Assembly: GCF_963921235.1 (NCBI RefSeq) | Contig: NC_086104.1 | Location: forward strand, 137,330,001 to 137,394,000 | DNA length: 64,000 bases | Direction: 5' to 3' | Origin: Mobula hypostoma | Lineage: Eukaryota | Part shown: positions 2,839-64,000 of the stretch, one piece after another | Position numbering within the stretch: position 1 is the first letter of the stretch | Layout of the letters: each line of letters opens with the position of its first letter | Made by a program: the position numbers and the translations under genes | The notes under the pieces: generated by a model | What the model saw: only the letters and a program-made list of their open reading frames with translations | What the model was told of the DNA's origin: nothing | Databases searched by the model: none

Positions 2839-3599
2839 CGAAGCAGTAAGTGCACCTGTACGAACAACATAAAGGGAACCAATTCTGTGCCAGCTCGTTC
2901 CACAATAATTTGTATGATTATGGAGCATCTTTAATGAAATAAAGGATGTGCTCTACAGAAGCATATTAAGTAAGGGCACACAAGCAGATGATGAAAAGCC
3001 TGAGGACTGCGGAAGATTTTAAGAGCTTCTTGACGGGCATGAACTTTAAGATTGGAATTCCACAGTTTAGAATCTGAGCAGCTGAGGTTATGAGTGCTGA
3101 TGTAAAGCATCTCTGAGAGAAACAAAATGCCTGAGCTTTGTCACATTTACAGGGAGAGAGAGAAAGAGATGAGACTTTGAAGGTATTCAAACGTTGGTGA
3201 AAACTTGCCTGAGCATGTCAGCATACCATTGACATAGCTAGTATAGTTATTTGTTCATTATGTGATCGGTTGTCAGTAGGAACACTTACACTTTCAGGTG
3301 CTCCTTAGGCTAGCTGTTAGTTATGGATGAGGAAGGACATCTTCATTCATCCATCCAATAGTTTTCCTATTTGTCTCTCCCACAATTCTACCCAGAGCAC
3401 ACAAGTGCAATATATTCTTCCCCGTGTCTGTAGATTGTCTTCACGACTCTTAAGTGCCATTGTGTCAGTCTATGTATTACAATAGAAATGTTGTGATTGC
3501 CTTTTGTTTCAGTTAATTAATTAACGGGTTAATTAAAACCTCCTGGGGAAGTGTCACCACAGAAGACGGATGCCAGTCAACAGTGAAAGGAAAGAAATT

Positions 3600-4332
3600 T
3601 AGACAACAGACAATAGGGTCAGGAGTAGGCCATTCGGCCCTTCGAGCCAGCACCGCCATTCACTGTGATCATGGCTGATCATCCACAATCTGTATCCAGT
3701 CCCTGCTTTATCCTCATAACCCTTGATTCTGCTATCTTTAAGAGCTCTATCCATCCCTTTCTTGAAAGCATCCAGAGACTTGGCCTCCACAGCCTTCTGG
3801 GGCAGAGCATTCCATATATCCACCACTCTCTGGGTGAAAAAGTTTTTCCTCAAATCCGTTCTAAATGGCCTACCCCTTATTCTTAAACTGTGGCCTCTGG
3901 TTCTGGACTCATCCATCGGCGGGAACATGCTTCCTGCCTCCAGCGTGTCCAATCCCTTAATAGTCTTATATGTTTCAATAAGATCCCCTCTCAGCCTTCT
4001 AAATTCCAGAGTATACAAGCCCAGTCACTCCAATCTTTCAACATATGATAATCCCGCCATCCCGGGAATTAACCTTGTGAACCTACGCTGCACTCCCTCA
4101 CTAGCAAGAATGTCCTTCCTCAAATTTGGAGACCAAAATTGCACACAGTACTCGAGGTGTGGTCTCACCAGGGCCCTGGACAGCTGCAGAAGGACCTCTT
4201 TGCTCTTATATTCAATTCCCCTTGTTATGAAGGACAGCATGTCATTAGCTTTCTTCACTGCCTGCTGTACTTGCATGCTTGCTTTCAGTGACTGATGAAC
4301 AAGAACACCTAGATCTCATTGCACTTCCCTAG
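3600..4332 (-). mobile_element. Young CR1 LINE 3' fragment
   Basis: VRPHLEYCVQFWSP...LEFRRLRGDLIETYK...NFFTQRVV; tail attgtctgttgtct. Confidence 0.9.
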
Positions 4333-4835
4333 GTTTTCTTCGACTATACTTCCACAAAAAGATGCAGCTCTGAGGGTGCCTCAAAGGTGGGGAGCAAATG
4401 AATTTGAAGAAACAATGCAACAGTGTGCTAATTATATAGACAGTATGACTATCGACAAAGATTTAGACCAGCTACATTGGTACAATTCCATCCCTTAAAT
4501 GATAAGTTATAAATGGTCTGAATCTGGTACAGTAAAATAGGGAACCAGGTATTAAAAGGAGGAAGAATCAGTTCGCAATGGGATGAAATCAAATAAAGGA
4601 ACTTTAGATGTTGGAAATCTGAAATAAAAATTGAAAAAAATGTAGCTGATTAGGCTGCATCCCCTGGAAAGAGGAATTGTCGGCAGTCCAGGTCTGTGAC
4701 CCTTCATTATATCTGGGAAGAGGTGCAGCAGGTCTTACACCATAGGACACGATCTGTGGATATTCCTTTGTGGAGCTGACAGTGAGATAAAATGAGTAAC
4801 AAAACTGCAGTAACAAAATGAACAACTGGACAGGT

Positions 4836-4853
4836 TTTATTAACCAGTTTATT
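4836..4853 (-). terminator. Tandem AATAAA polyadenylation signals with downstream GT/T-rich element (candidate distal LZTS1 3' end)
   Basis: tttatt at 4836-4841 and 4848-4853 on +. On - they are followed by ccagttgttcattttgttactgcagttttg. Confidence 0.35.
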
Positions 4854-5710
4854 TTAAAAGACTCTTACACATTGTGAATCACCAAGATTTCACGCCATTG
4901 GATCAGCCTTTCAGTATGGCACTTCAGAATGCTTTCAGATAGTTCCAACAGAAAAAAAACAGAAACAAATTCAGTTGGAAGCATAGTTACCTCCCAAAAC
5001 AAACATTAGCTTATGTCGCCTAAACAGTCCTCTGAGTATGATTGAGTGTTGCAGCATGTAACACATCCCTTGGGATTATGGCAATAGAAACTCGAAGCAA
5101 AGAAGAAAACTTGACCTGTTTTTCAAGAGCAGGTTCCTTGTACTAGCACCAGTACTTTATTACACCCACCCACATGTTGTTCAATGGAATAACACCGATA
5201 CAGTAAGTACACAGGCTAACTTGACATTAGTTAAGTCAGAGTAATAGAGCATGGAAACAAGCTCTTTGGCTCATCTAGTCCATGCTGTCCACAGCATCTC
5301 CCCATTACCTGCATTCAGCCCATAACCATTGTTGGAAAGAAAATGCAACTGAAGAATGAATAGTTTCTATGAAGGTGCAACTTTTTTGCTTTCTCTCCCT
5401 TAATTTGAATATAACCCGCCAATTCCCAGTGTCTTATGCTTCAGTGTCTGGTGCTCTCCCTTATAACAAAAATGATGAACCGAGCTGAAGCAATTAGATC
5501 CTTAGTGTTGGTGGACTATGTACTTTTGGCCATGAATCACTTCCTTAATAAATCAGAGAACTAGAAGAATAGATACATTAAATAAAAATTCTCAGGCTGG
5601 TTTGTACAATATTGAAGCCCTGTTTTCAGTGGCCAGTCATCCTGTCTCCTGGTTCAATTGGCTTAGAGCAGCTCTGCTCAAGATATAACTAATGGTCCAA
5701 AGCAGCCTTA

Positions 5711-6003
5711 TTTATTTATTTATTTATTTATTGAGATACGGTGTGAAGTAGGCCCTTCTGGCCCTTCGAGCCACGCTGCCCAGCAATCCCTTATTTGACC
5801 CTAACCTAATCACAGAACAATTGACAATGACCAATTTACCCTCTAACAGGTATGCCTTTGGACTGTGGAGGGAAACCAGAGCACCCGGAGGAAGCCCACG
5901 AGGTCACGTGGAGAAAGTACAATCTTCTTTTCAGTCAGCTGCTGGAATTGAACCCAGGTCATCGATACTGTAAAGCATTGTGCTAACCACTTCGCCACCA
6001 TAC
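5711..6003 (-). mobile_element. V-SINE (HE1-like) with CR1-type tail and (TAAA)n
   Basis: GTGGCGAAGTGGTTAGC, GGGTTCAATTCC, V-domain. Confidence 0.85.
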
Positions 6004-6929
6004 CACTATATTTAGTCAAGCCTAATGCAAAGCTAACAGCATAATACTTGCAAATCTGGTATTTATTTTGCAATAATGCTATATCCATTTAGCATTAAAG
6101 TTTGGCACCACAGAAGCAGCTGGATAATTTTCACTGACCACTTCGTTCCCATAAGGAGGTAATGTTGCATGAGCCAAGAATAGGTTTGAATACCTTGGTG
6201 CTGATTCTCCAGGTATGCCTCCCTCTTTATTGGAATTACTCCTCACATTAGCTTTGACTCACAAAATAAAATATTGGTGGGGATTTTCCTTTCAGATCAC
6301 GGATGGAGCACACCAATCTTACACTGACTTCTGAGGTTGAATACTGATCCTGCTAAGAGCAACTGGCAGATATTGAGCCTCATCAATAATATTTATTGCC
6401 TGTGCTCGAGGCTAACAGCTCCTGCCTTCAGTCACTCGTAAGTATTGGGATAGGATGCTGTGAAATACTGCAGCAGCTTTTTTACTGATTCAACTCTTTT
6501 GGGATCTGATCTCCTTGTGGAAGTGGACCAAGGGAGCTTTTGGGACAGACTTTCTAAAATTTAGACCCAGCAACAAGGCTGTGTGACTTGGAAGGGAATA
6601 TGCTGGTGTTTCAGAAGTGCTTGTTGCCTACAGTAGTGTGCGGTATACATTTAGGAGCCGTCCAGTACCAAAGGTGAGTAAGTGCACTGTATTTTGTAGA
6701 TATTGTGTACACTATGCATTGGAGGTGGAGAGAACCAATACGTAGTGTAGTGAATGAGTTACCTATTGAATGATGTGCTTTGTCCCCAAATGTGTCATGT
6801 TTCTTGAGTGTACTTAGAGATTTACATTCACCTGAGAGGAATGAAGGGATCTTGGCTCAACATCTCAGCTAAAGGCAGCATTTCTCAGAGTGTAGTAATC
6901 CTTCAATACCTTAATGGTCTATAGTCTAC

Positions 6930-9286: not shown

Positions 9287-9393
9287 CGTTGACTCTCTAA
9301 TCCTCTCCATAGATGCTGCCTGACCCATTGAGTTCCTCCAGCATTTTGTCTGTGCTACTCTGAATTTCCAGCATCTGCAAAATCTCTTGTGTT
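9287..9393 (+). mobile_element. PLE tail fragment starting near the hammerhead cleavage site
   Basis: cgtt|gactc...tccatagatgctgcctgacc...agttcctccagcattttg...ccagcatctgca. Confidence 0.65.
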
Positions 9394-14637: not shown

Positions 14638-15082
14638 ACACAAGAAAGTCTGCAGATGCCGGAAATCCAAAGCAGCACACACCAAATGCTGGAGGAACTC
14701 AGCAGGTCAGGCAGCATCTATGGAGATGAATAGATAGTCGGCGTTTTGGGCCGAGACCCTTCTTCAGGACTGAAGGGGAAGGGGGCAAATGCCAGAATAA
14801 AAAGGTGGAGGTGGGTGGGAAGGGGAAGGAGGACAGCTAAAAGCTGATAGGTGAAGCCAGGTGGGTGAGAAAAGAGCTGGAGAAGAAGGAATCTGATAGG
14901 AGAGAAGAGTGGACTATAGAAGAAAGGAATGATGAGGGGACCCAGAGGGAACTAATAGGCAGATGAGAAGAGGTGGGGAACAGAGGAAGTGGGGTGGTGG
15001 GGGGGGAACTAGTTTAGTGGAAGGAGAAATCGATATTCAGGCCATCAGGTTGGAGGCTACCCAGAAGGAACACAAGGTGTTG
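14638..15082 (-). mobile_element. Penelope-like 3' remnant with degenerate hammerhead (14735-14772), in an LZTS1 intron
   Basis: End of GIY-YIG (LGSLQPDGLNIDF); CAGTC-CTGAAGA-AGGGTCTCGGCCC-AAAA-CG-CC-GACTA. Confidence 0.8.
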
Positions 15083-19267: not shown

Positions 19268-19926
19268 GTTACCTCTCTCCTTCTTCTCACTTACCCATCA
19301 CCTCCCCTGGTTCCTTCCTCCTTTCTTTCTTCCCATGGTCTATTCTCCTCTGCTATCAGACTGTTTCTTCTTCAGCTGTTTACCTTTTCCACCTATCATC
19401 CCCCAGATGATCACATAATCCCCCCTCCCTCACCCACCACCTTCCCCCTCACCTGGTGTCACCCATCACCTGCCAGCTTCTCACTTCATCCCATCCCCAC
19501 CTTCCCTCCTCACCTGGTCTCGCTGATCATCTACCAGCTTCTCACATCAACCCCCTCTCCCACCTACTCACCTTCCCCTCTCACCTGGTCTTACTGATCG
19601 CCTGCCAGCTTCTCACATCACCCCCCTCCCCCACCTATTCACCTGGTCTTACCAATCACCTGCCAGCTTCTCCCTTCATCCCCTCTCACCTGGTCTCACC
19701 GATCACCTGCCAGCTTCTCACTTCATTCCCCTCCCCATCCACCCACCTTCCCCCTCACCTGGTCTCACCTGCTAGCTTGTACTCCTTCGCCTCCCTCCAC
19801 CTTTATATTCTGGCTTCTCCCTTCCTTTCCATTCCTGATGAAAGGTCTCGGCCCAAAAGGTCAACTGTTTATTCCCCTCCATAGAAGCTACCTGACCTGC
19901 TGAGTTCCTCCAGCATTTTGTGCGTC
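19268..19926 (+). mobile_element. PLE 3' remnant with internal tandem expansion and degenerate hammerhead (19830-19867)
   Basis: CT-rich UTR homologous to the other PLE copies; CCTGATGA-AAGGTCTCGGCCC-AAAA-GG-TC-AACTG. Confidence 0.75.
19440..19780 (+). repeat. Degenerate minisatellite, ~6 units of 45-70 bp
   Basis: Repeated cacctggtctcaccgatcacctgccagcttctcac. Confidence 0.8.
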
Positions 19927-22919: not shown

Positions 22920-23098
22920 GAGAAAATCTGCAGATGCTGGAAATCCAAGCAACACAAAATGCTGGAGGAGCTCAGCAGGCCAGGCAGCATCTATGGAAAA
23001 GAGTACAGTCGGCGTTTCCCAAGACCCTTCAGCAGGAATGTGCTCTTTTGCATAGATGCTGCCTGGCCTGCTGAGTTTCTCCAGCATTTGGTGTGTGC
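22920..23098. mobile_element. Fold-back PLE end: hammerhead (minus, 23006-23040) between inverted tails
   Basis: Arms ~22952-23007 and ~23039-23094 are reverse complements. Confidence 0.75.
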
Positions 23099-29747: not shown

Positions 29748-30000
29748 AGACACAAGAGACTGGAGACATCGGAATGAAACAAGGAATCTGCTGGAAGAAC
29801 TCAGTACTTCAGGCACCATCTCTGGAGGGGAGTGGACAGTCGACATTTTGGGTCGAGACCCTTCATCTGGTCTCAAAGACCATGCATTGTAACTGATACC
29901 TCTCCATTCCAGACCTAACGCAGCATATTGACCCGAAACATCTGCAATTCCTTTCCTCCCATAGAAGCTGCTTGATCCGCAGAGCTCTTCCAGCAGATTA
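29748..30000. mobile_element. Inverted pair of PLE ends with degenerate hammerhead (29837-29873)
   Basis: cagtcgacattttgggtcgagacccttcatctgg, followed by gacccgaaacatc...ctcttccagcaga in the opposite orientation. Confidence 0.65.
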
Positions 30001-48809: not shown

Positions 48810-48945
48810 AATTCCTGATGACGGGTCTCAGCTCACAACGTTGACTGTTTACTCCCCTCCATAGATGTTACCTGACCTGCAGATTTCCTCCACTATTTTG
48901 TGTGTGTTGCTCTGGATTCTCAGCATCTTCAGAATCGCTGAAGTA
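48810..48945 (+). mobile_element. PLE-end unit with degenerate hammerhead
   Basis: CCTGATGA-CGGGTCTCAGCTC-ACAA-CGTT-GACTG followed by the conserved tail. Confidence 0.7.
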
Positions 48946-49104: not shown

Positions 49105-49705
49105 AGCTGGGATTTCCCATGGCTACCCATCCATTTCCGTTCCGACATGTCGGTCCATGGCCTACTCTATGGTCACGATCAGGCCACTTTCAGGTTGGAG
49201 GAGCAACGCTTCATAGTCCGTCTGGTAACCTCCATCCTAATGGCATGCACATCGATTTCTGTAACTTCTGGTAATTTTTCCCCCTTCCACTTATCTCTTT
49301 TTCCGTTCCCCATTCTGATTCCCCTCGTACCCCTTCTCTTCTCCTCACCTCCCTCTGGTGTCCCTCCTCTTTCTATTTCTCCCATGGTCCACTGTCCTAT
49401 CCGATACCTTCCTCTTCAGCCCTTTATCTCCTCCATCCATCATCTTCCAGCTTCTCTCTTCATCCCCTCTTCCCCCACCTATCCACCTTCCCCTTCACCT
49501 CATCTCACCTATCACCTGCCGGCTTGTACTCCTTCCCTTTGCCCCACCTTCTTATTGTAACTTTTCCCCCCTTCCGCCCCAGTCCTGATGAAGGGCCTGG
49601 GCCTGAAACGTGGATAGCTTATCGCTCTCCATCGATGCTGCTTGACCCGCGGAGTTTGGGAGTGTTGCTCTGCATTTTCCAGCACCTGCAGAGTCTCTTG
49701 TGTTT
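49105..49705 (+). mobile_element. Penelope-like 3' remnant with hammerhead motif (49580-49617)
   Basis: MSVHGLLYGHDQATFRLEEQRFIVRL; CT-rich UTR; CAGTC-CTGATGA-AGGGCCTGGGCCT-GAAA-CG-TG. Confidence 0.8.
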
Positions 49706-52729: not shown

Positions 52730-54045
52730 TAGCATCGGTGAGACTTGGCGCAGATTGGGGGACCGCTTTGCTAAACACTTTCACTCTGACCACTGCAAAA
52801 GGCGAGATCTCCCCATGGCTTCCCATTTCAATTTGACTTGCAATTTCCATTCTGATGTGTCTGCTTTTGGCCTCCTCTGCTGCCAGGATGAGACCAAACT
52901 CAAGTTGCAGGAGCTACAACTCGTAATCTGAGTAGCGTCCAACCTGATGGCACGAACAACGATTTAGATTATTAGATTATGAGGACACGCAGTCCTCTTT
53001 TATTGTCATTTAGTAATGCATGCATTAAGAAATGATACAATGTTCCTCCAGAATGATATCACAGAAACACAAGACAAACCAAGACTAAAAAAACTGACAA
53101 AACCACATAATTATAACGTATAGTTACAACAGTGCAAAGCAATACCGTAATTTGATAAAGAACAGACCATGGGCATGGTAAAAAAGTCTCAAAGTCCCGA
53201 TAGTCCCATCATCTCACGCAGATGGTAGAAGGGAGAAACTCTCTTCCTGCCATGAACCTCCAGCGCTGCAAACTTGCTGATGCAGCACCCTGGAAGCACC
53301 CGACCACAGTCCGACTCTGAATCCGTCCGAAAACCTCGAGCCTCCGACCAGCCCTCCGACACCGAGCACCATCTCTGCTGAGTGCTTCGACCCCGGTCCC
53401 AGCAATAGGCAATAGGCAAAGCCGAGGATTTGGGGCCTTCCCCTCCGGAGATTCTCGATCGCACAGTAGCAACAGCAGCGAAGCAGGCATTTCAGAAGTT
53501 TCTCCAGATGTTCCTCCATGCTTCTCACGTCTGTCTCCATCAAATCAGGATTGTGCACAGTACCTACTTAACAAATACGATACCATTTTGGAGCGGCCGC
53601 GCACGCTGTGTTGCGCCACCATCTTCTCCTCCCCTCCAATTTCTCTGACTCTCAGTAATTTCTCTCCCGCCCACCTCTCTTTTGCTATTTCCCTATTCTG
53701 GTTACCCTCTTCTTTCTTTTCTCATCACCTCCCTCTGGTTCCCCTCCTCCTTCCCTTTCTTTAATGCTTTACTATCCTCTCCTATTAGATTCCTTCTCTT
53801 CAGCCCTTTACCTCTTCCACCGATCATCTCCCAGCTTCTTACTTCATCTCCCTCCTCCTTCCCCTCAACTTACTTATCACCTGTCAGGTTGTACTCCTCC
53901 TCTTCCACCAATTTCTTATTCTGGCTTCTCCCCGTTCCTTTCCAGTCCTGATGAAGGGTCTCTGTCAGAAACATCAACTGCTTATTCCCTTCCATAGATG
54001 CTGCCTGACCTGCTGAGTTCCCCTGACACTTTGCATCTGTTACTC
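52730..54045 (+). mobile_element. Penelope-like GIY-YIG remnant plus 3' end with hammerhead (53943-53980), interrupted at 52966-53636
   Basis: IGETWRRLGDRFAKH...DLPMASHFN...GLLCCQDETKLKLQE. Resumes after the insertion. Motif CAGTC-CTGATGA-AGGGTCTCTGTCA-GAAA-CA-TC-AACTG. Confidence 0.8.
52966..53636 (-). mobile_element. Second copy of that element, inserted into a PLE
   Basis: Flanked by CGATTT/CAATTT (probable TSD); the PLE sequence rejoins across it. Confidence 0.8.
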
Positions 54046-59616: not shown

Positions 59617-59829
59617 TTTGCTGTAAATTTCCAAGACATGTTTGAACTCTGAATTGGAGCTGCCAGTAGAGATTTAAAGGTACAATTAAGTGGGATGAAC
59701 CTATTGGGAATTCAGGTACTTTTCCAGCCAAAATTGCCGTAAGTGAAGTTTGGATCAGCTTCAGTATGGATGAATGACTTCCTGATGGGTTTCACGCTGA
59801 AATGATTTCCATTAGATTTTTAAAAACGC

Positions 59830-59964
59830 AAACACGAGGAAATCTGCAAATGCTGAAATCTCAAGCAACACACATCAAAGTTGCTGGTGAACGCAGCAGG
59901 CCAGGCAGCATCTCTAGGAAAAGGTACAGTTGACATTTCAGGCCAAGACCCTTCGTCAGGACTC
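59830..59964 (-). mobile_element. Second copy of the same mini PLE-end subfamily, hammerhead with CpG-type changes
   Basis: Nearly identical to 63263-63392. Core GAGTC-CTGACGA-AGGGTCTTGGCCT-GAAA-TG-TC-AACTG at 59927-59964. Confidence 0.75.
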
Positions 59965-62695: not shown

Positions 62696-63262
62696 GCTAC
62701 CTTTTCAAAGGTCCCATCTTTCAGATGAGAGTACAGATCATTCAGTTTAATGGAAGATTTAGTTGCACAGATGGAGTAAAGCAGAGAGGTGTTGCACCTT
62801 GAACAGGCAGAGAAAACAGACTGTGGATCTGTTTCATCTGAGCCTCACACCATTCTGACTTGGAAGTATTTCACTGGCCTGGTAGGCTCTGCCAGCAGTA
62901 ACACAGAAGCACATTCACTAGGACTGCGGCGGTTCAAGCTACCTCAACAGCACCTTCCAAAGGACAACTGGGAATGGGCAAAACATCTCCCAGATCACAT
63001 CACAAATAAGGAATCAAAAGTCTTTCAGTTTATCTGAAATTTCTTTTTTTTTAAACAGTTGAATGAAGTTTTTACTTATAGCACCTCAACATAGCAATAA
63101 TGCAAACAAGCGTTTTCCAAGCAACTTTCAGTCACAATTCATCAAGTTCACAAAATGTATTTTTTTTTAACATTACAGTTTAGAACAGAATCAGAACAAA
63201 GTTGCCAGTGAAGTGATGCTTTGATAGTGTGTTCAAGCAAGAGAACAAGTTGAGCATCCTTC

Positions 63263-63416
63263 CACGAGGAAATCTGCAGAGGCTGGAACTTCAAGCAACA
63301 CACATCAAAGTTGCTGGTGAACGCAGCAGGCCAGGCAGCATCTATTGGAAGAGGTACAGTCGACGTTTCGGGCCGAGACCCTTCGTCAGGACGAACTGAA
63401 AGAATGTGTGTTGCTC
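63263..63416 (-). mobile_element. Mini Penelope-derived unit (hammerhead + 3' tail + short inverted tail) with 11-bp TSD
   Basis: GAGCATCCTTC at 63252-63262 and 63417-63427. Terminal tgtgtgttgct is the inverse of internal agcaacacaca. Confidence 0.75.
63357..63394 (-). ncRNA. Minimal type-I hammerhead ribozyme motif, intact core
   Basis: Minus strand reads GTC-CTGACGA-A-GGGT-CTCG-GCCC-GAAA-CG-TC|GAC-TG: all core nucleotides, stem II, palindromic ACGT stem III and a GUC cleavage triplet. Confidence 0.8.
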
Positions 63417-64000
63417 GAGCATCCTTCTTCCGTTTTGGGGTAATCTGTCCTGCATTGCCCTGTACACTGTCATATTGGTATGTTTCTGCATCACAGTATC
63501 ATTACAAAGCATAGCATTTACGAAGTGAAAAGTTTAAACAATCACAAATTTGGTCCATGCTCTTGTCCCCTCTTAGCAACTCACTTGCCCACTCACAGAA
63601 CAAGATGTACTTGCAAAGTTTATCTATTCTGTGGAAACATCACTGCAGAGTCATGAAACGAAGAAACAAAAGACAGATACACAGACTTGACATTACCGTT
63701 TAATGTACAATCCAGCGAATAAACAGAATGAACTACAAATTACATAAAAACCATCCAATGTTTACTGTCAATGTTTTACTGTTACAGATCATTTCTTCTG
63801 GCCAGTAAAATAATGACAAAAATACTGAAGTATTGAAAAAGCTTTAACTCAGGTACTGGAACAAGATGACTTCTGTCTACTCAAACTGGTCAAGCTGTGA
63901 TTTAGAAACATAGTGTACTTAACTATCTCTTTTTTTTTAAAGTGGAATGTGTGCCCAGGATGCCTGTTATAAGATAATGAACCTTACAGCAGTTTATCTG

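What the first reader, a model, noticed from the sequence alone, without database searches (positions are those of the whole stretch)
63252..63427. Intact minimal hammerhead ribozyme in a ~154-bp stand-alone, TSD-flanked mobile unit
Seen: the minus strand reads GUC-CUGACGA-A-GGGU-CUCG-GCCC-GAAA-CG-UC|GAC, with predicted cleavage between 63362 and 63361. The unit has no coding sequence, ends in a short inverted tail and is bracketed by an 11-bp direct repeat (GAGCATCCTTC). A near-identical unit lies at 59830-59964. Known: Penelope-like elements carry minimal type-I hammerheads whose palindromic stem III (ACGU) is thought to need a dimer to cleave. Inference: a very small ribozyme-bearing non-autonomous retroelement (retrozyme-like mini-SINE) mobilised by PLE machinery in this lineage.
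Basis: partly seen in the sequence, partly recalled or inferred. Interest (0 to 1): 0.8.

Follow-up and report, generated by a model that had tools for sequence, protein, structure and literature searches.

The report
Truncated Penelope retrotransposon tail with hammerhead
The 154-base, repeat-flanked unit is an ordinary 5'-truncated insertion of the tail of a very abundant Penelope-like retrotransposon, which always carries a minimal hammerhead ribozyme motif there; it is not a separate miniature mobile element.

Summary
The sequence observation is correct. The minus strand 63392-63359 reads a complete minimal type-I hammerhead (C17 = 63362). The 154-nt insert (63263-63416) is flanked by an 11-bp duplication. 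A paralogous locus in the same genome holds the target once and has no insert.

In 50 family copies sharing this 3' end, 5' ends are scattered from 79 to over 1,400 nt. Longer copies run upstream into a reverse transcriptase plus GIY-YIG endonuclease ORF of about 1,016-1,058 aa, the hallmark of an autonomous Penelope-like element (PLE). The junction that defines this particular unit occurs once in 3.48 Gb. No tandem, retrozyme-like arrays were found.

The unit is a miniature standard PLE insertion. It has a 142-nt direct arm ending at the usual 3' site. It also has a 12-nt inverted arm starting 31 nt further in, at the point where most inverted arms of the family end. This matches the published PLE "tail" and two-strand priming.

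The identical 34-nt hammerhead occurs 6,605 times in this genome. Ribozyme activity is untested, and published minimal PLE hammerheads are inactive as monomers.

This scan has already noted such tails elsewhere in this genome. Known kind, low interest.

The parts
63252..63262 (.). Left copy of the 11-bp target-site duplication GAGCATCCTTC
   Evidence: Present once at the paralogous empty site on C2.
63263..63404 (-). Direct arm: 142 nt of the PLE 3' region. It comprises the last 43 nt of 3' UTR before the cleavage site (which include the 5' part of the hammerhead) plus 99 nt downstream of the cleavage site, and ends at the family's usual 3' end ...CCTCGTG ('site 1')
   Evidence: 95-97% identical to 40 scored genomic copies over exactly this span. 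Those copies extend further 5' into 3' UTR, GIY-YIG and RT sequence.
63359..63392 (-). Minimal type-I hammerhead motif: helix I GUC/GAC, core CUGACGA, unpaired A, helix II GGGU-CUCG-GCCC, GAA, palindromic ACGU in place of helix III, C17 at 63362
   Evidence: The features match the published min-HHR of PLEs (PMC4209133). The identical 34-mer occurs 6,605 times in the genome, with 0 for the reversed control.
63294..63315 (-). Stem-loop AGCAAC-N10-GTTGCT. Its 3' strand is the inner initiation zone ('site 0') where inverted arms and some direct arms of the family end
   Evidence: L044 and L076 direct arms end here. 15 of 20 inverted arms end 29-42 nt upstream of site 1.
63263..63293 (-). 31-nt 'tail' between site 0 and site 1, present on the direct arm only
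   Evidence: It corresponds to the 30-40 bp PLE tail present at one end of insertions (PMC8557442) and to the stretch between the two RT start sites (PMC11167929).
63405..63416 (+). Inverted arm: 12 nt, element-sense on the + strand, reverse complement of 63305/4-63294. Its outer end lies 31 nt upstream of site 1 in element coordinates, the family's modal position
   Evidence: The junction with the direct arm is unique in the genome.
63417..63427 (.). Right copy of the 11-bp target-site duplication
59819..59962 (-). Second, older copy of the same family: 130-nt direct arm starting at the first hammerhead base, plus the 14-nt extension TTTGCGTTTTTAAA. Its hammerhead is degraded by CpG transitions

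Best explanation
The element's endonuclease has Neptune-type motifs. In this family the hammerhead lies about 330 nt after the ORF stop. The sequence downstream of the cleavage site continues, in pLTR or tandem arrangements, into the 5' UTR and ORF of the next unit. Reverse transcription starts inside that downstream region, not at an RNA 3' end.

For this copy, cDNA primed from one nicked target strand started at '...CCTCGTG' (site 1). It ran 142 nt back through the uncleaved hammerhead and then stopped. A second, 12-nt cDNA in the opposite orientation started at the inner site 31 nt upstream (site 0), presumably primed from the other target strand. The two were joined at one base of microhomology, and the 11-bp staggered cut was filled in to give the duplication.

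The hammerhead is therefore a passenger. In the parent element it probably processes the multi-unit transcript, as a dimer or with help from the element's protein. In this promoter-less solo copy it has no role in mobility. As a monomer it cannot form helix III.

Shown: anatomy, family membership, 5'-truncation series, parent ORF, pLTR arrangement, empty paralogous site, and uniqueness of the unit. Inferred: the order of priming events, two-strand priming, and any ribozyme activity.
For: (1): 40 scored copies are 95-97% identical over insert positions 13-154 only, and their homology continues upstream for 142 to over 1,413 nt.
(2): a sample drawn with the last 70 nt only, so unbiased for 5' length, gives 79 to 1,367 nt with no shared 5' boundary.
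(3): in L032 the same copy is preceded by GIY-YIG (1.7e-4) and RVT_1 (5e-7) on the same strand.
(4): RT relatives gave 62,617 first-look candidates with open frames up to 1,058 aa. In L044 the open frame 3276-6449 ends with CX4CX2C, then GVIY-CxxCxxC-LYIGET, and the hammerhead unit follows at 6736-6844.
(5): in L056 the hammerhead unit is contiguous with the element body (90.6% to L044 3351-4849), which is a pLTR.
(6): 20 of 50 copies carry an adjacent inverted arm, 15 of these end 29-42 nt before site 1, and TSDs are 9-16 bp. The window copy fits with 31 nt and 11 bp.
(7): a paralogous empty site has the target once.
(8): the arm junction is unique in the genome.
(9) Literature: min-HHRs lie in PLE pLTRs, and most genomic motifs are solo and ascribed to truncated PLEs (PMC4209133). 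PLEs show 5' truncation, inverted 5' copies and a one-sided 30-40 bp tail (PMC8557442). In an Anolis PLE, RT initiates internally at two sites downstream of the HHR, both strands are cleaved and extended, and uncleaved RNA is the dominant template (PMC11167929).
Against: No RNA data could be obtained, so neither transcription nor cleavage is shown. The priming order and two-strand model rest on analogy with one Anolis element of a different PLE clade. The Neptune assignment rests on motifs only, with no phylogeny. Pfam scores for GIY-YIG are just below the gathering cut-off (22.3 against 22.6), and RVT_1 reaches 30.1 against 29.6 in L032 but only 23.8 in L044. The copy samples (50 unique) come from the best-scoring hits of a capped search, not from a full census. 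Fifteen of 30 unbiased copies are shorter than 150 nt. That is expected from strong 5' truncation, but a full histogram might still show modest peaks, for example near 130 nt at the base of the hammerhead.
Confidence: 0.93

Rival explanations
1. One reading: a discrete, very small non-autonomous retroelement (a retrozyme-like mini-SINE) that carries its own hammerhead and is mobilised in trans by PLE proteins as a unit.
For: It is TSD-flanked, non-coding and carries an intact hammerhead core. Short copies of 79-157 nt make up about half of an unbiased sample. Animal non-LTR retrozymes are reported to derive from PLE pLTRs (bioRxiv 10.64898/2026.07.22.740005).
Against: 5' ends are scattered and no two sampled short copies share both boundaries. 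The unit's defining junction is unique in 3.48 Gb at up to 3 mismatches. Homology of near-identical copies runs on into the RT and EN ORF. The head-to-tail junction pattern gave one hit, which is a chance resemblance of a target site. Rfam gave no match at all in the window at gathering thresholds, so no tRNA-, 5S- or 7SL-type SINE head. The second window copy differs at both ends.
Confidence: 0.03
2. A domesticated or host-relevant ribozyme: the solo hammerhead cleaves a host transcript that runs through it, alone, with a neighbouring copy or with PLE protein.
For: The catalytic core is intact. At least 6,605 identical motifs exist, so two copies in one transcript are plausible. A PLE protein has been reported to assist its hammerhead in vitro (PMC11167929).
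Against: The monomer has no helix III and only a 3-bp helix I. Its predicted MFE (-12.0 kcal/mol) is a non-catalytic hairpin that sequesters the core, against -7.7 for helices I and II alone. A double hammerhead can be drawn but scores -14.3 against -32.3 kcal/mol for the dimer MFE. Published min-HHRs show no monomer activity and weak dimer activity (PMC4209133). About 60% of young copies have already lost the strict motif, mostly by CpG transitions, which looks like neutral decay. The paralogous locus lacks it.
Confidence: 0.02
3. Chance motif or assembly artefact.
For: Rfam finds nothing. The region is a high-copy repeat.
Against: The pattern gives 6 hits against 0.4 expected in the window and 6,605 exact copies against 0 for the reversed control. 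An independent run set holds a contig that bridges the unique right junction without a mismatch (X23 record 7, 63375-63800).
Confidence: 0.01

Closest known systems
Minimal hammerheads (min-HHR) of metazoan Penelope-like elements (Cervera & de la Pena 2014, PMC4209133; dimer cleavage by Lunse et al. 2017 as cited in PMC6765202)
   Same: Type I. Full core. An unpaired nucleotide between A9 and G10.1. A G10.1-C11.1 pair. Palindromic 15.2-16.2 with no loop III. Located in the pLTR region. Thousands of solo genomic motifs ascribed to truncated PLEs.
   Different: Helix II is 4 bp with a 4-nt loop rather than the 7-8 bp reported for Schistosoma families. Helix I is only 3 bp in this copy (5 bp in the sister variant with A at position 2.4). 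The host is a ray, and no paper I found describes PLE hammerheads in rays. The count of identical motifs (6,605) is as high as or higher than whole min-HHR sets reported for coelacanth (about 4,000) and Xenopus (about 9,000).
Poseidon PLE of Anolis carolinensis, PAc (Frangieh et al. 2024, PMC11167929)
   Same: The hammerhead lies upstream of the RT initiation region. There are two initiation zones a few tens of nt apart, and the stretch between them is the genomic 'tail'. Here they lie 68 and 99 nt after the cleavage site, against about 85-92 nt in PAc. Insertions contain the uncleaved hammerhead. The signature fits extension from both target strands.
   Different: In PAc the ORF starts inside the hammerhead and RT starts 111-118 nt into the ORF. 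Here the likely start codon lies about 50 nt downstream of site 1 (L044, ATG at 3399). The endonuclease has the extra CX2-5CxxC linker motif of Neptune/Nematis, which Penelope/Poseidon lack (PMC8557442). There is a further variable 0-14 nt extension beyond site 1. Nothing has been tested biochemically here.
Animal non-LTR retrozymes and Schistosoma SINE-like hammerhead elements (PMC7229834; bioRxiv 10.64898/2026.07.22.740005; PMC6765202)
   Same: Short non-coding DNA with a type-I hammerhead that needs a partner copy, evolutionarily tied to PLE pLTRs.
   Different: Retrozymes are tandem arrays giving unit-length circular RNAs, and the Schistosoma elements have a promoter and fixed ends. This unit is single, has idiosyncratic ends, and is continuous in sequence with the autonomous element.

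Membership tests
PLE minimal hammerhead (min-HHR) | Conserved core C3-U4-G5-A6-N7-G8-A9, G12-A13-A14, A15.1-U16.1, H17 | tested here: met
   CUGACGA ... GAA-A ... U-C at 63389-63362, minus strand
PLE minimal hammerhead (min-HHR) | Unpaired nucleotide between A9 and G10.1, and a G10.1-C11.1 pair closing helix II | tested here: met
   A at 63382, then GGGU/GCCC. Criteria from PMC4209133.
PLE minimal hammerhead (min-HHR) | No closed helix III; palindromic 15.1-16.1 segment able to pair between two copies | tested here: met
   ACGU at 63366-63363. A nested double-hammerhead drawing is possible.
PLE minimal hammerhead (min-HHR) | Helix I of 4-5 bp | tested here: inconclusive
   3 bp (GUC/GAC) in this copy, because position 2.4 is C. 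It is 5 bp in the common variant with A.
PLE minimal hammerhead (min-HHR) | Self-cleavage (as a dimer or protein-assisted) | not testable with these tools
   Only contig-level runs were available and none is on record as RNA. The thermodynamic model does not favour the catalytic fold.
Rfam hammerhead families | Match to a curated covariance model | tested here: not met
   No hit at gathering score or at E<=10. I read this as expected for a motif without helix III, but did not test that.
Endonuclease-positive Penelope-like element (5'-truncated copy) | Parent element encodes RT followed by a C-terminal GIY-YIG endonuclease with two Cys between GIY and YIG | tested here: met
   RVT_1 and GIY-YIG upstream of the same copy in L032. 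GVIY-CVRCSRC-LYIGET in the L044 ORF.
Endonuclease-positive Penelope-like element (5'-truncated copy) | Copies share the 3' end and are variably 5'-truncated; TSDs of variable length | tested here: met
   Lengths 79 to over 1,400 nt and TSDs 9-16 bp.
Endonuclease-positive Penelope-like element (5'-truncated copy) | pLTR or partial tandem arrangement with the hammerhead in the pLTR | tested here: met
   L056: hammerhead unit contiguous with the element body.
Endonuclease-positive Penelope-like element (5'-truncated copy) | Inverted 5' copy and a 30-40 bp tail at one end only | tested here: met
   20 of 50 copies have inverted arms, and 15 of these lack the last 29-42 nt. The window copy has a 12-nt arm lacking 31 nt.
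Neptune clade of PLEs | CX2-5CxxC motif in the RT-EN linker plus CCHH in the EN; RT phylogeny | tested here: inconclusive
   CKRNKCYTC is present. No phylogeny was made and Nematis shares the motif (PMC8557442).
Non-LTR retrozyme / SINE-like hammerhead element | Discrete unit with fixed ends shared by many copies | tested here: not met
   Scattered 5' ends. The unit junction is unique in the genome.
Non-LTR retrozyme / SINE-like hammerhead element | Head-to-tail tandem repeats, each with a hammerhead | tested here: not met
   The junction pattern gave 1 hit at up to 2 mismatches, which is a target-site coincidence.
Non-LTR retrozyme / SINE-like hammerhead element | Unit-length linear or circular RNA | not testable with these tools
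   No raw RNA reads were available.

The most novel reading that the evidence does not exclude
With at least 6,605 identical, intact minimal hammerheads scattered through the genome on solo tails and fold-back copies, pairs of copies in one host transcript, or the PLE protein acting in trans, could make these tails conditional RNA-cleavage sites in host pre-mRNAs. Short tail copies such as this one could then occasionally be re-used as templates by the PLE machinery.
Probability: 0.06. Interest if true: 0.55.

Novelty: new member of a known kind. Interest (0 to 1): 0.15.

Why it matters
It matters little for this locus. The copy is a textbook by-product of PLE integration, and such solo hammerheads have been known since 2014. 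Its modest value lies elsewhere. The family is very large and young in a cartilaginous fish. Its copies give a clean natural record of PLE integration: direct arms ending at one site, and inverted arms ending about 31 nt further in. That record agrees with the internal-initiation and two-strand model so far shown only in vitro for one lizard element. The case also shows why 'TSD-flanked ribozyme-only units' in this genome should not be scored as new mobile elements.

Tried and rejected
(1) Rfam at gathering score and at E<=10 gave no hammerhead or other family.

(2) RNA evidence for cleavage: no run is on record as RNA and only Logan contigs are available, so starts and ends cannot be seen.

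(3) Orthologous or allelic empty site by laying DNA contigs. A joint skipping exactly 165 nt (154 + 11) appeared in four runs from three organisms. I first read this as heterozygosity in the source species and absence in two relatives. I retract that. All 9 differences of the X23 'empty' contig are the bases of a paralog on C2, which is identical to the window over 63219-63263, so that contig is a chimera of this locus's left flank and the paralog's right flank. The contigs from the other organisms are also paralog-like. Only the paralogous empty site stands. Polymorphism and presence in sister species remain undetermined.

(4) Tandem 130-nt units were suggested by 'goes back 130' joints in contigs. 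The assembly has a single such junction, and it is a chance resemblance of a target site.

(5) Structure of the 99-nt region after the cleavage site: a hairpin with an apical AGCAAC/GUUGCU stem, but z = -0.19, no better than shuffles.

(6) Double-hammerhead energetics: it can be drawn but is not favoured. This neither supports nor excludes activity.

(7) Solved structures related to the ORF: none.

(8) A literature search for PLEs in elasmobranchs found nothing specific, and the Lunse et al. paper is not held.

Full report
**1. The observation**

On the minus strand, 63392-63359 reads GTC-CTGACGA-A-GGGT-CTCG-GCCC-GAAA-CG-TC|GAC, with C17 at 63362. The + strand 11-mer GAGCATCCTTC stands at 63252-63262 and again at 63417-63427, and 154 nt lie between them. 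The first 12 nt of the insert (63416-63405, with one more ambiguous base) are the reverse complement of 63305/4-63294 in the same insert. No ORF of 70 aa or more touches the unit. A loose hammerhead pattern hits the window 6 times against 0.4 expected, and every hit lies in a related repeat copy. Rfam gives nothing at gathering thresholds or at E<=10. I read that as expected for a motif with no closed helix III, but did not test it.

The 'near-identical' second unit (59962-59833 plus 14 further nt) is 90.8% identical. It starts at the first hammerhead base rather than 12 nt upstream of it. It ends 14 nt later. It has lost four CpGs of the motif.

**2. The insertion is real**

The sequence flanking the unit is a two-copy sequence in this genome. 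The other copy, on C2, matches 63055-63263 (93.8%) and 63417-63997 (92.3%) as one contiguous stretch. It carries the 11-mer once and has no insert. So 154 nt plus one copy of the 11-mer were added at this locus after the duplication.

**3. What it is a piece of**

The genome is 3.48 Gb in 200 contigs, and the window is C22:137330001-137394000.

The 40 scored genomic matches to the unit are 95-97% identical, but only from insert position 13 onward. Their own sequence continues upstream, and the homology runs from 142 to more than 1,413 nt. A second sample was drawn with only the last 70 nt, so it is unbiased for 5' length. It gave direct-arm lengths of 79, 79, 103, 107, 110, 113, 117, 118, 125, 130, 130, 139, 142, 145, 145, 178, 197, 268, 274, 378, 389, 414, 430, 490, 516, 769, 796, 1,109, 1,260 and 1,367 nt (refined in 49). 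That is a 5'-truncation series with a common 3' end.

In L032, the copy that is 95% identical to the window unit is preceded on the same strand by a GIY-YIG fragment (E = 1.7e-4) and an RVT_1 fragment (E = 5e-7). RT relatives are very numerous: 62,617 first-look candidates, with open frames up to 1,058 aa.

In L044 an open frame (3276-6449, likely ATG at 3399) ends with CKRNKCYTC followed by GVIY-CVRCSRC-LYIGET. This is a GIY-YIG endonuclease with two cysteines inside the core and a CX2-5CxxC linker motif, which Craig et al. list for Neptune/Nematis-type PLEs. The hammerhead unit follows about 290 nt after the stop. In L056 the hammerhead unit is directly continuous with the element body, so it forms a pLTR.

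The 154-nt insert therefore spans the junction of two units of a tandem or pLTR transcript. It holds the last 43 nt before the cleavage site and the first 99 nt after it.

**4. Architecture compared with the family**

I surveyed 50 unique copies.
- 20 have an inverted arm abutting the direct arm.
- In 15 of those 20, the arm's outer end lies 29-42 nt upstream of the direct arm's 3' end, in the 3' strand of the stem-loop AGCAAC-N10-GTTGCT.
- Some direct arms also end there (L044, L076).
- Beyond ...CCTCGTG the 3' junction varies by 0-14 nt of TTTGCGTTTTTAAA.
- TSDs are 9-16 bp.

The window copy has a 12-nt arm ending 31 nt upstream, a direct arm ending at CCTCGTG, and an 11-bp TSD. It is the same design in miniature.

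This is the published PLE signature. Craig et al. describe frequent 5' truncation, an inverted 5'-truncated copy, and a 30-40 bp 'tail' at one end only (PMC8557442). Frangieh et al. explain that signature by reverse transcription starting at two internal sites downstream of the hammerhead, with both target strands cleaved and extended in vitro (PMC11167929). Because the cDNA crosses the cleavage site, the template was uncleaved there. The same paper reports unprocessed RNA as the dominant substrate.

**5. Is it a discrete unit?**

No.
- The junction between the inverted and direct arms occurs once in the genome at up to 3 mismatches.
- No two sampled short copies share both ends.
- A head-to-tail junction pattern gave one hit, which is a target-site coincidence.
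- Rfam found no family at all in the window, so no tRNA-, 5S- or 7SL-type SINE head.

**6. The hammerhead**

It has every feature that Cervera and de la Pena list for metazoan PLE min-HHRs: the core, the extra nucleotide after A9, the G10.1-C11.1 pair, and palindromic ACGU with no loop III. Helix I is only 3 bp here, against 5 bp in the sister variant with A at position 2.4.

The identical 34-mer (N7 free) occurs 6,605 times in the genome, against 0 for the reversed control. Only 15 of about 40 young copies that reach the motif keep it strictly, and the losses are mostly CpG transitions. That looks like neutral decay of inserted copies.

The predicted monomer MFE (-12.0 kcal/mol) is a hairpin that buries the core. 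A nested double hammerhead can be drawn, but it scores -14.3 against -32.3 kcal/mol for the dimer MFE. Published min-HHRs are inactive as monomers and weak as dimers, and the Anolis one needs its protein. Activity here is untested.

**7. A corrected false lead**

DNA contigs from four runs showed a joint skipping exactly 165 nt. I first read this as an empty allele in the source species and in two relatives. The C2 paralog explains it instead. The nine differences of the 'empty' contig of run X23 are exactly the paralog's bases. The paralog is identical to the window over the last 45 nt before the insertion point, so a de Bruijn contig can cross from one locus to the other. No statement about polymorphism or about sister species can be made. 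What remains is that an independent run set holds a contig bridging the unique right junction without a mismatch (63375-63800).

**8. Abundance**

Besides the 6,605 exact motifs, related tails occur at about 17 per 134 kb of unselected sequence (the window plus downstream flanks). About 4 of those are at least 90% identical. This suggests on the order of 1e5 copies of related tails. The figure is very rough.

**9. Verdict**

This is an ordinary 5'-truncated insertion of an abundant, young PLE, with a short inverted arm suggesting priming from both strands. It carries the family's minimal hammerhead as a passenger. The kind has been known since 2014, and this scan has already noted the same tails elsewhere in this genome. 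Interest is low.

Noticed in passing
window 63055-63997 (at least) and G000 C2:118107138-118107902 (L078 1314-2078): The sequence around the insertion is a two-copy duplication, 92-94% identical. The C2 copy lacks the PLE tail. This paralog makes short-read contigs chimeric at this locus and mimics an empty allele.
   Followed up: yes
window 9309-9379(+), 14639-14770(-), 19833-19915(+), 22920-23037(-) with 23052-23097(+), 29789-29870(-), 48813-48933(+), 49582-49656(+), 53945-54033(+): At least eight older tails (73-81% identical) of related PLE families lie in the same 64 kb. Their sequence upstream of the hammerhead is different (CT-rich ...ccttcc...ttattctggc...), and their hammerhead cores are mostly mutated. 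The pair at about 23 kb is a fold-back.
   Followed up: partly
G000 genome-wide: There are 6,605 exact copies (3,287 + 3,318) of the 34-nt hammerhead GTCCTGANGAAGGGTCTCGGCCCGAAACGTCGAC. This single variant is comparable in number to the whole min-HHR sets published for coelacanth and Xenopus.
   Followed up: partly
L076 1440-1640 (G000 C18:118198947 region): A 98-nt tail copy runs from the first hammerhead base to the inner site ...GATGTATGTTG. It is inserted, with TSD TTTCCTGGTGG, into a sequence that looks like the GIY-YIG coding region of another PLE (by eye; not tested).
   Followed up: partly
L044 1446-3071 (+): A 542-aa open frame with a strong RVT_1 match (4.4e-29) lies just upstream of the PLE copy. 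It belongs to a different, LINE-like retroelement.
   Followed up: no
L045 3142-3329 and 6498-6671: An ORF-bearing PLE copy (open frame about 1,058 aa) has its 5' end abutting an inverted tail copy, so inverted hammerhead-bearing repeats flank the whole element.
   Followed up: partly
window, whole: The window contains 348 N (gap or masked). I did not examine or fill them.
   Followed up: no
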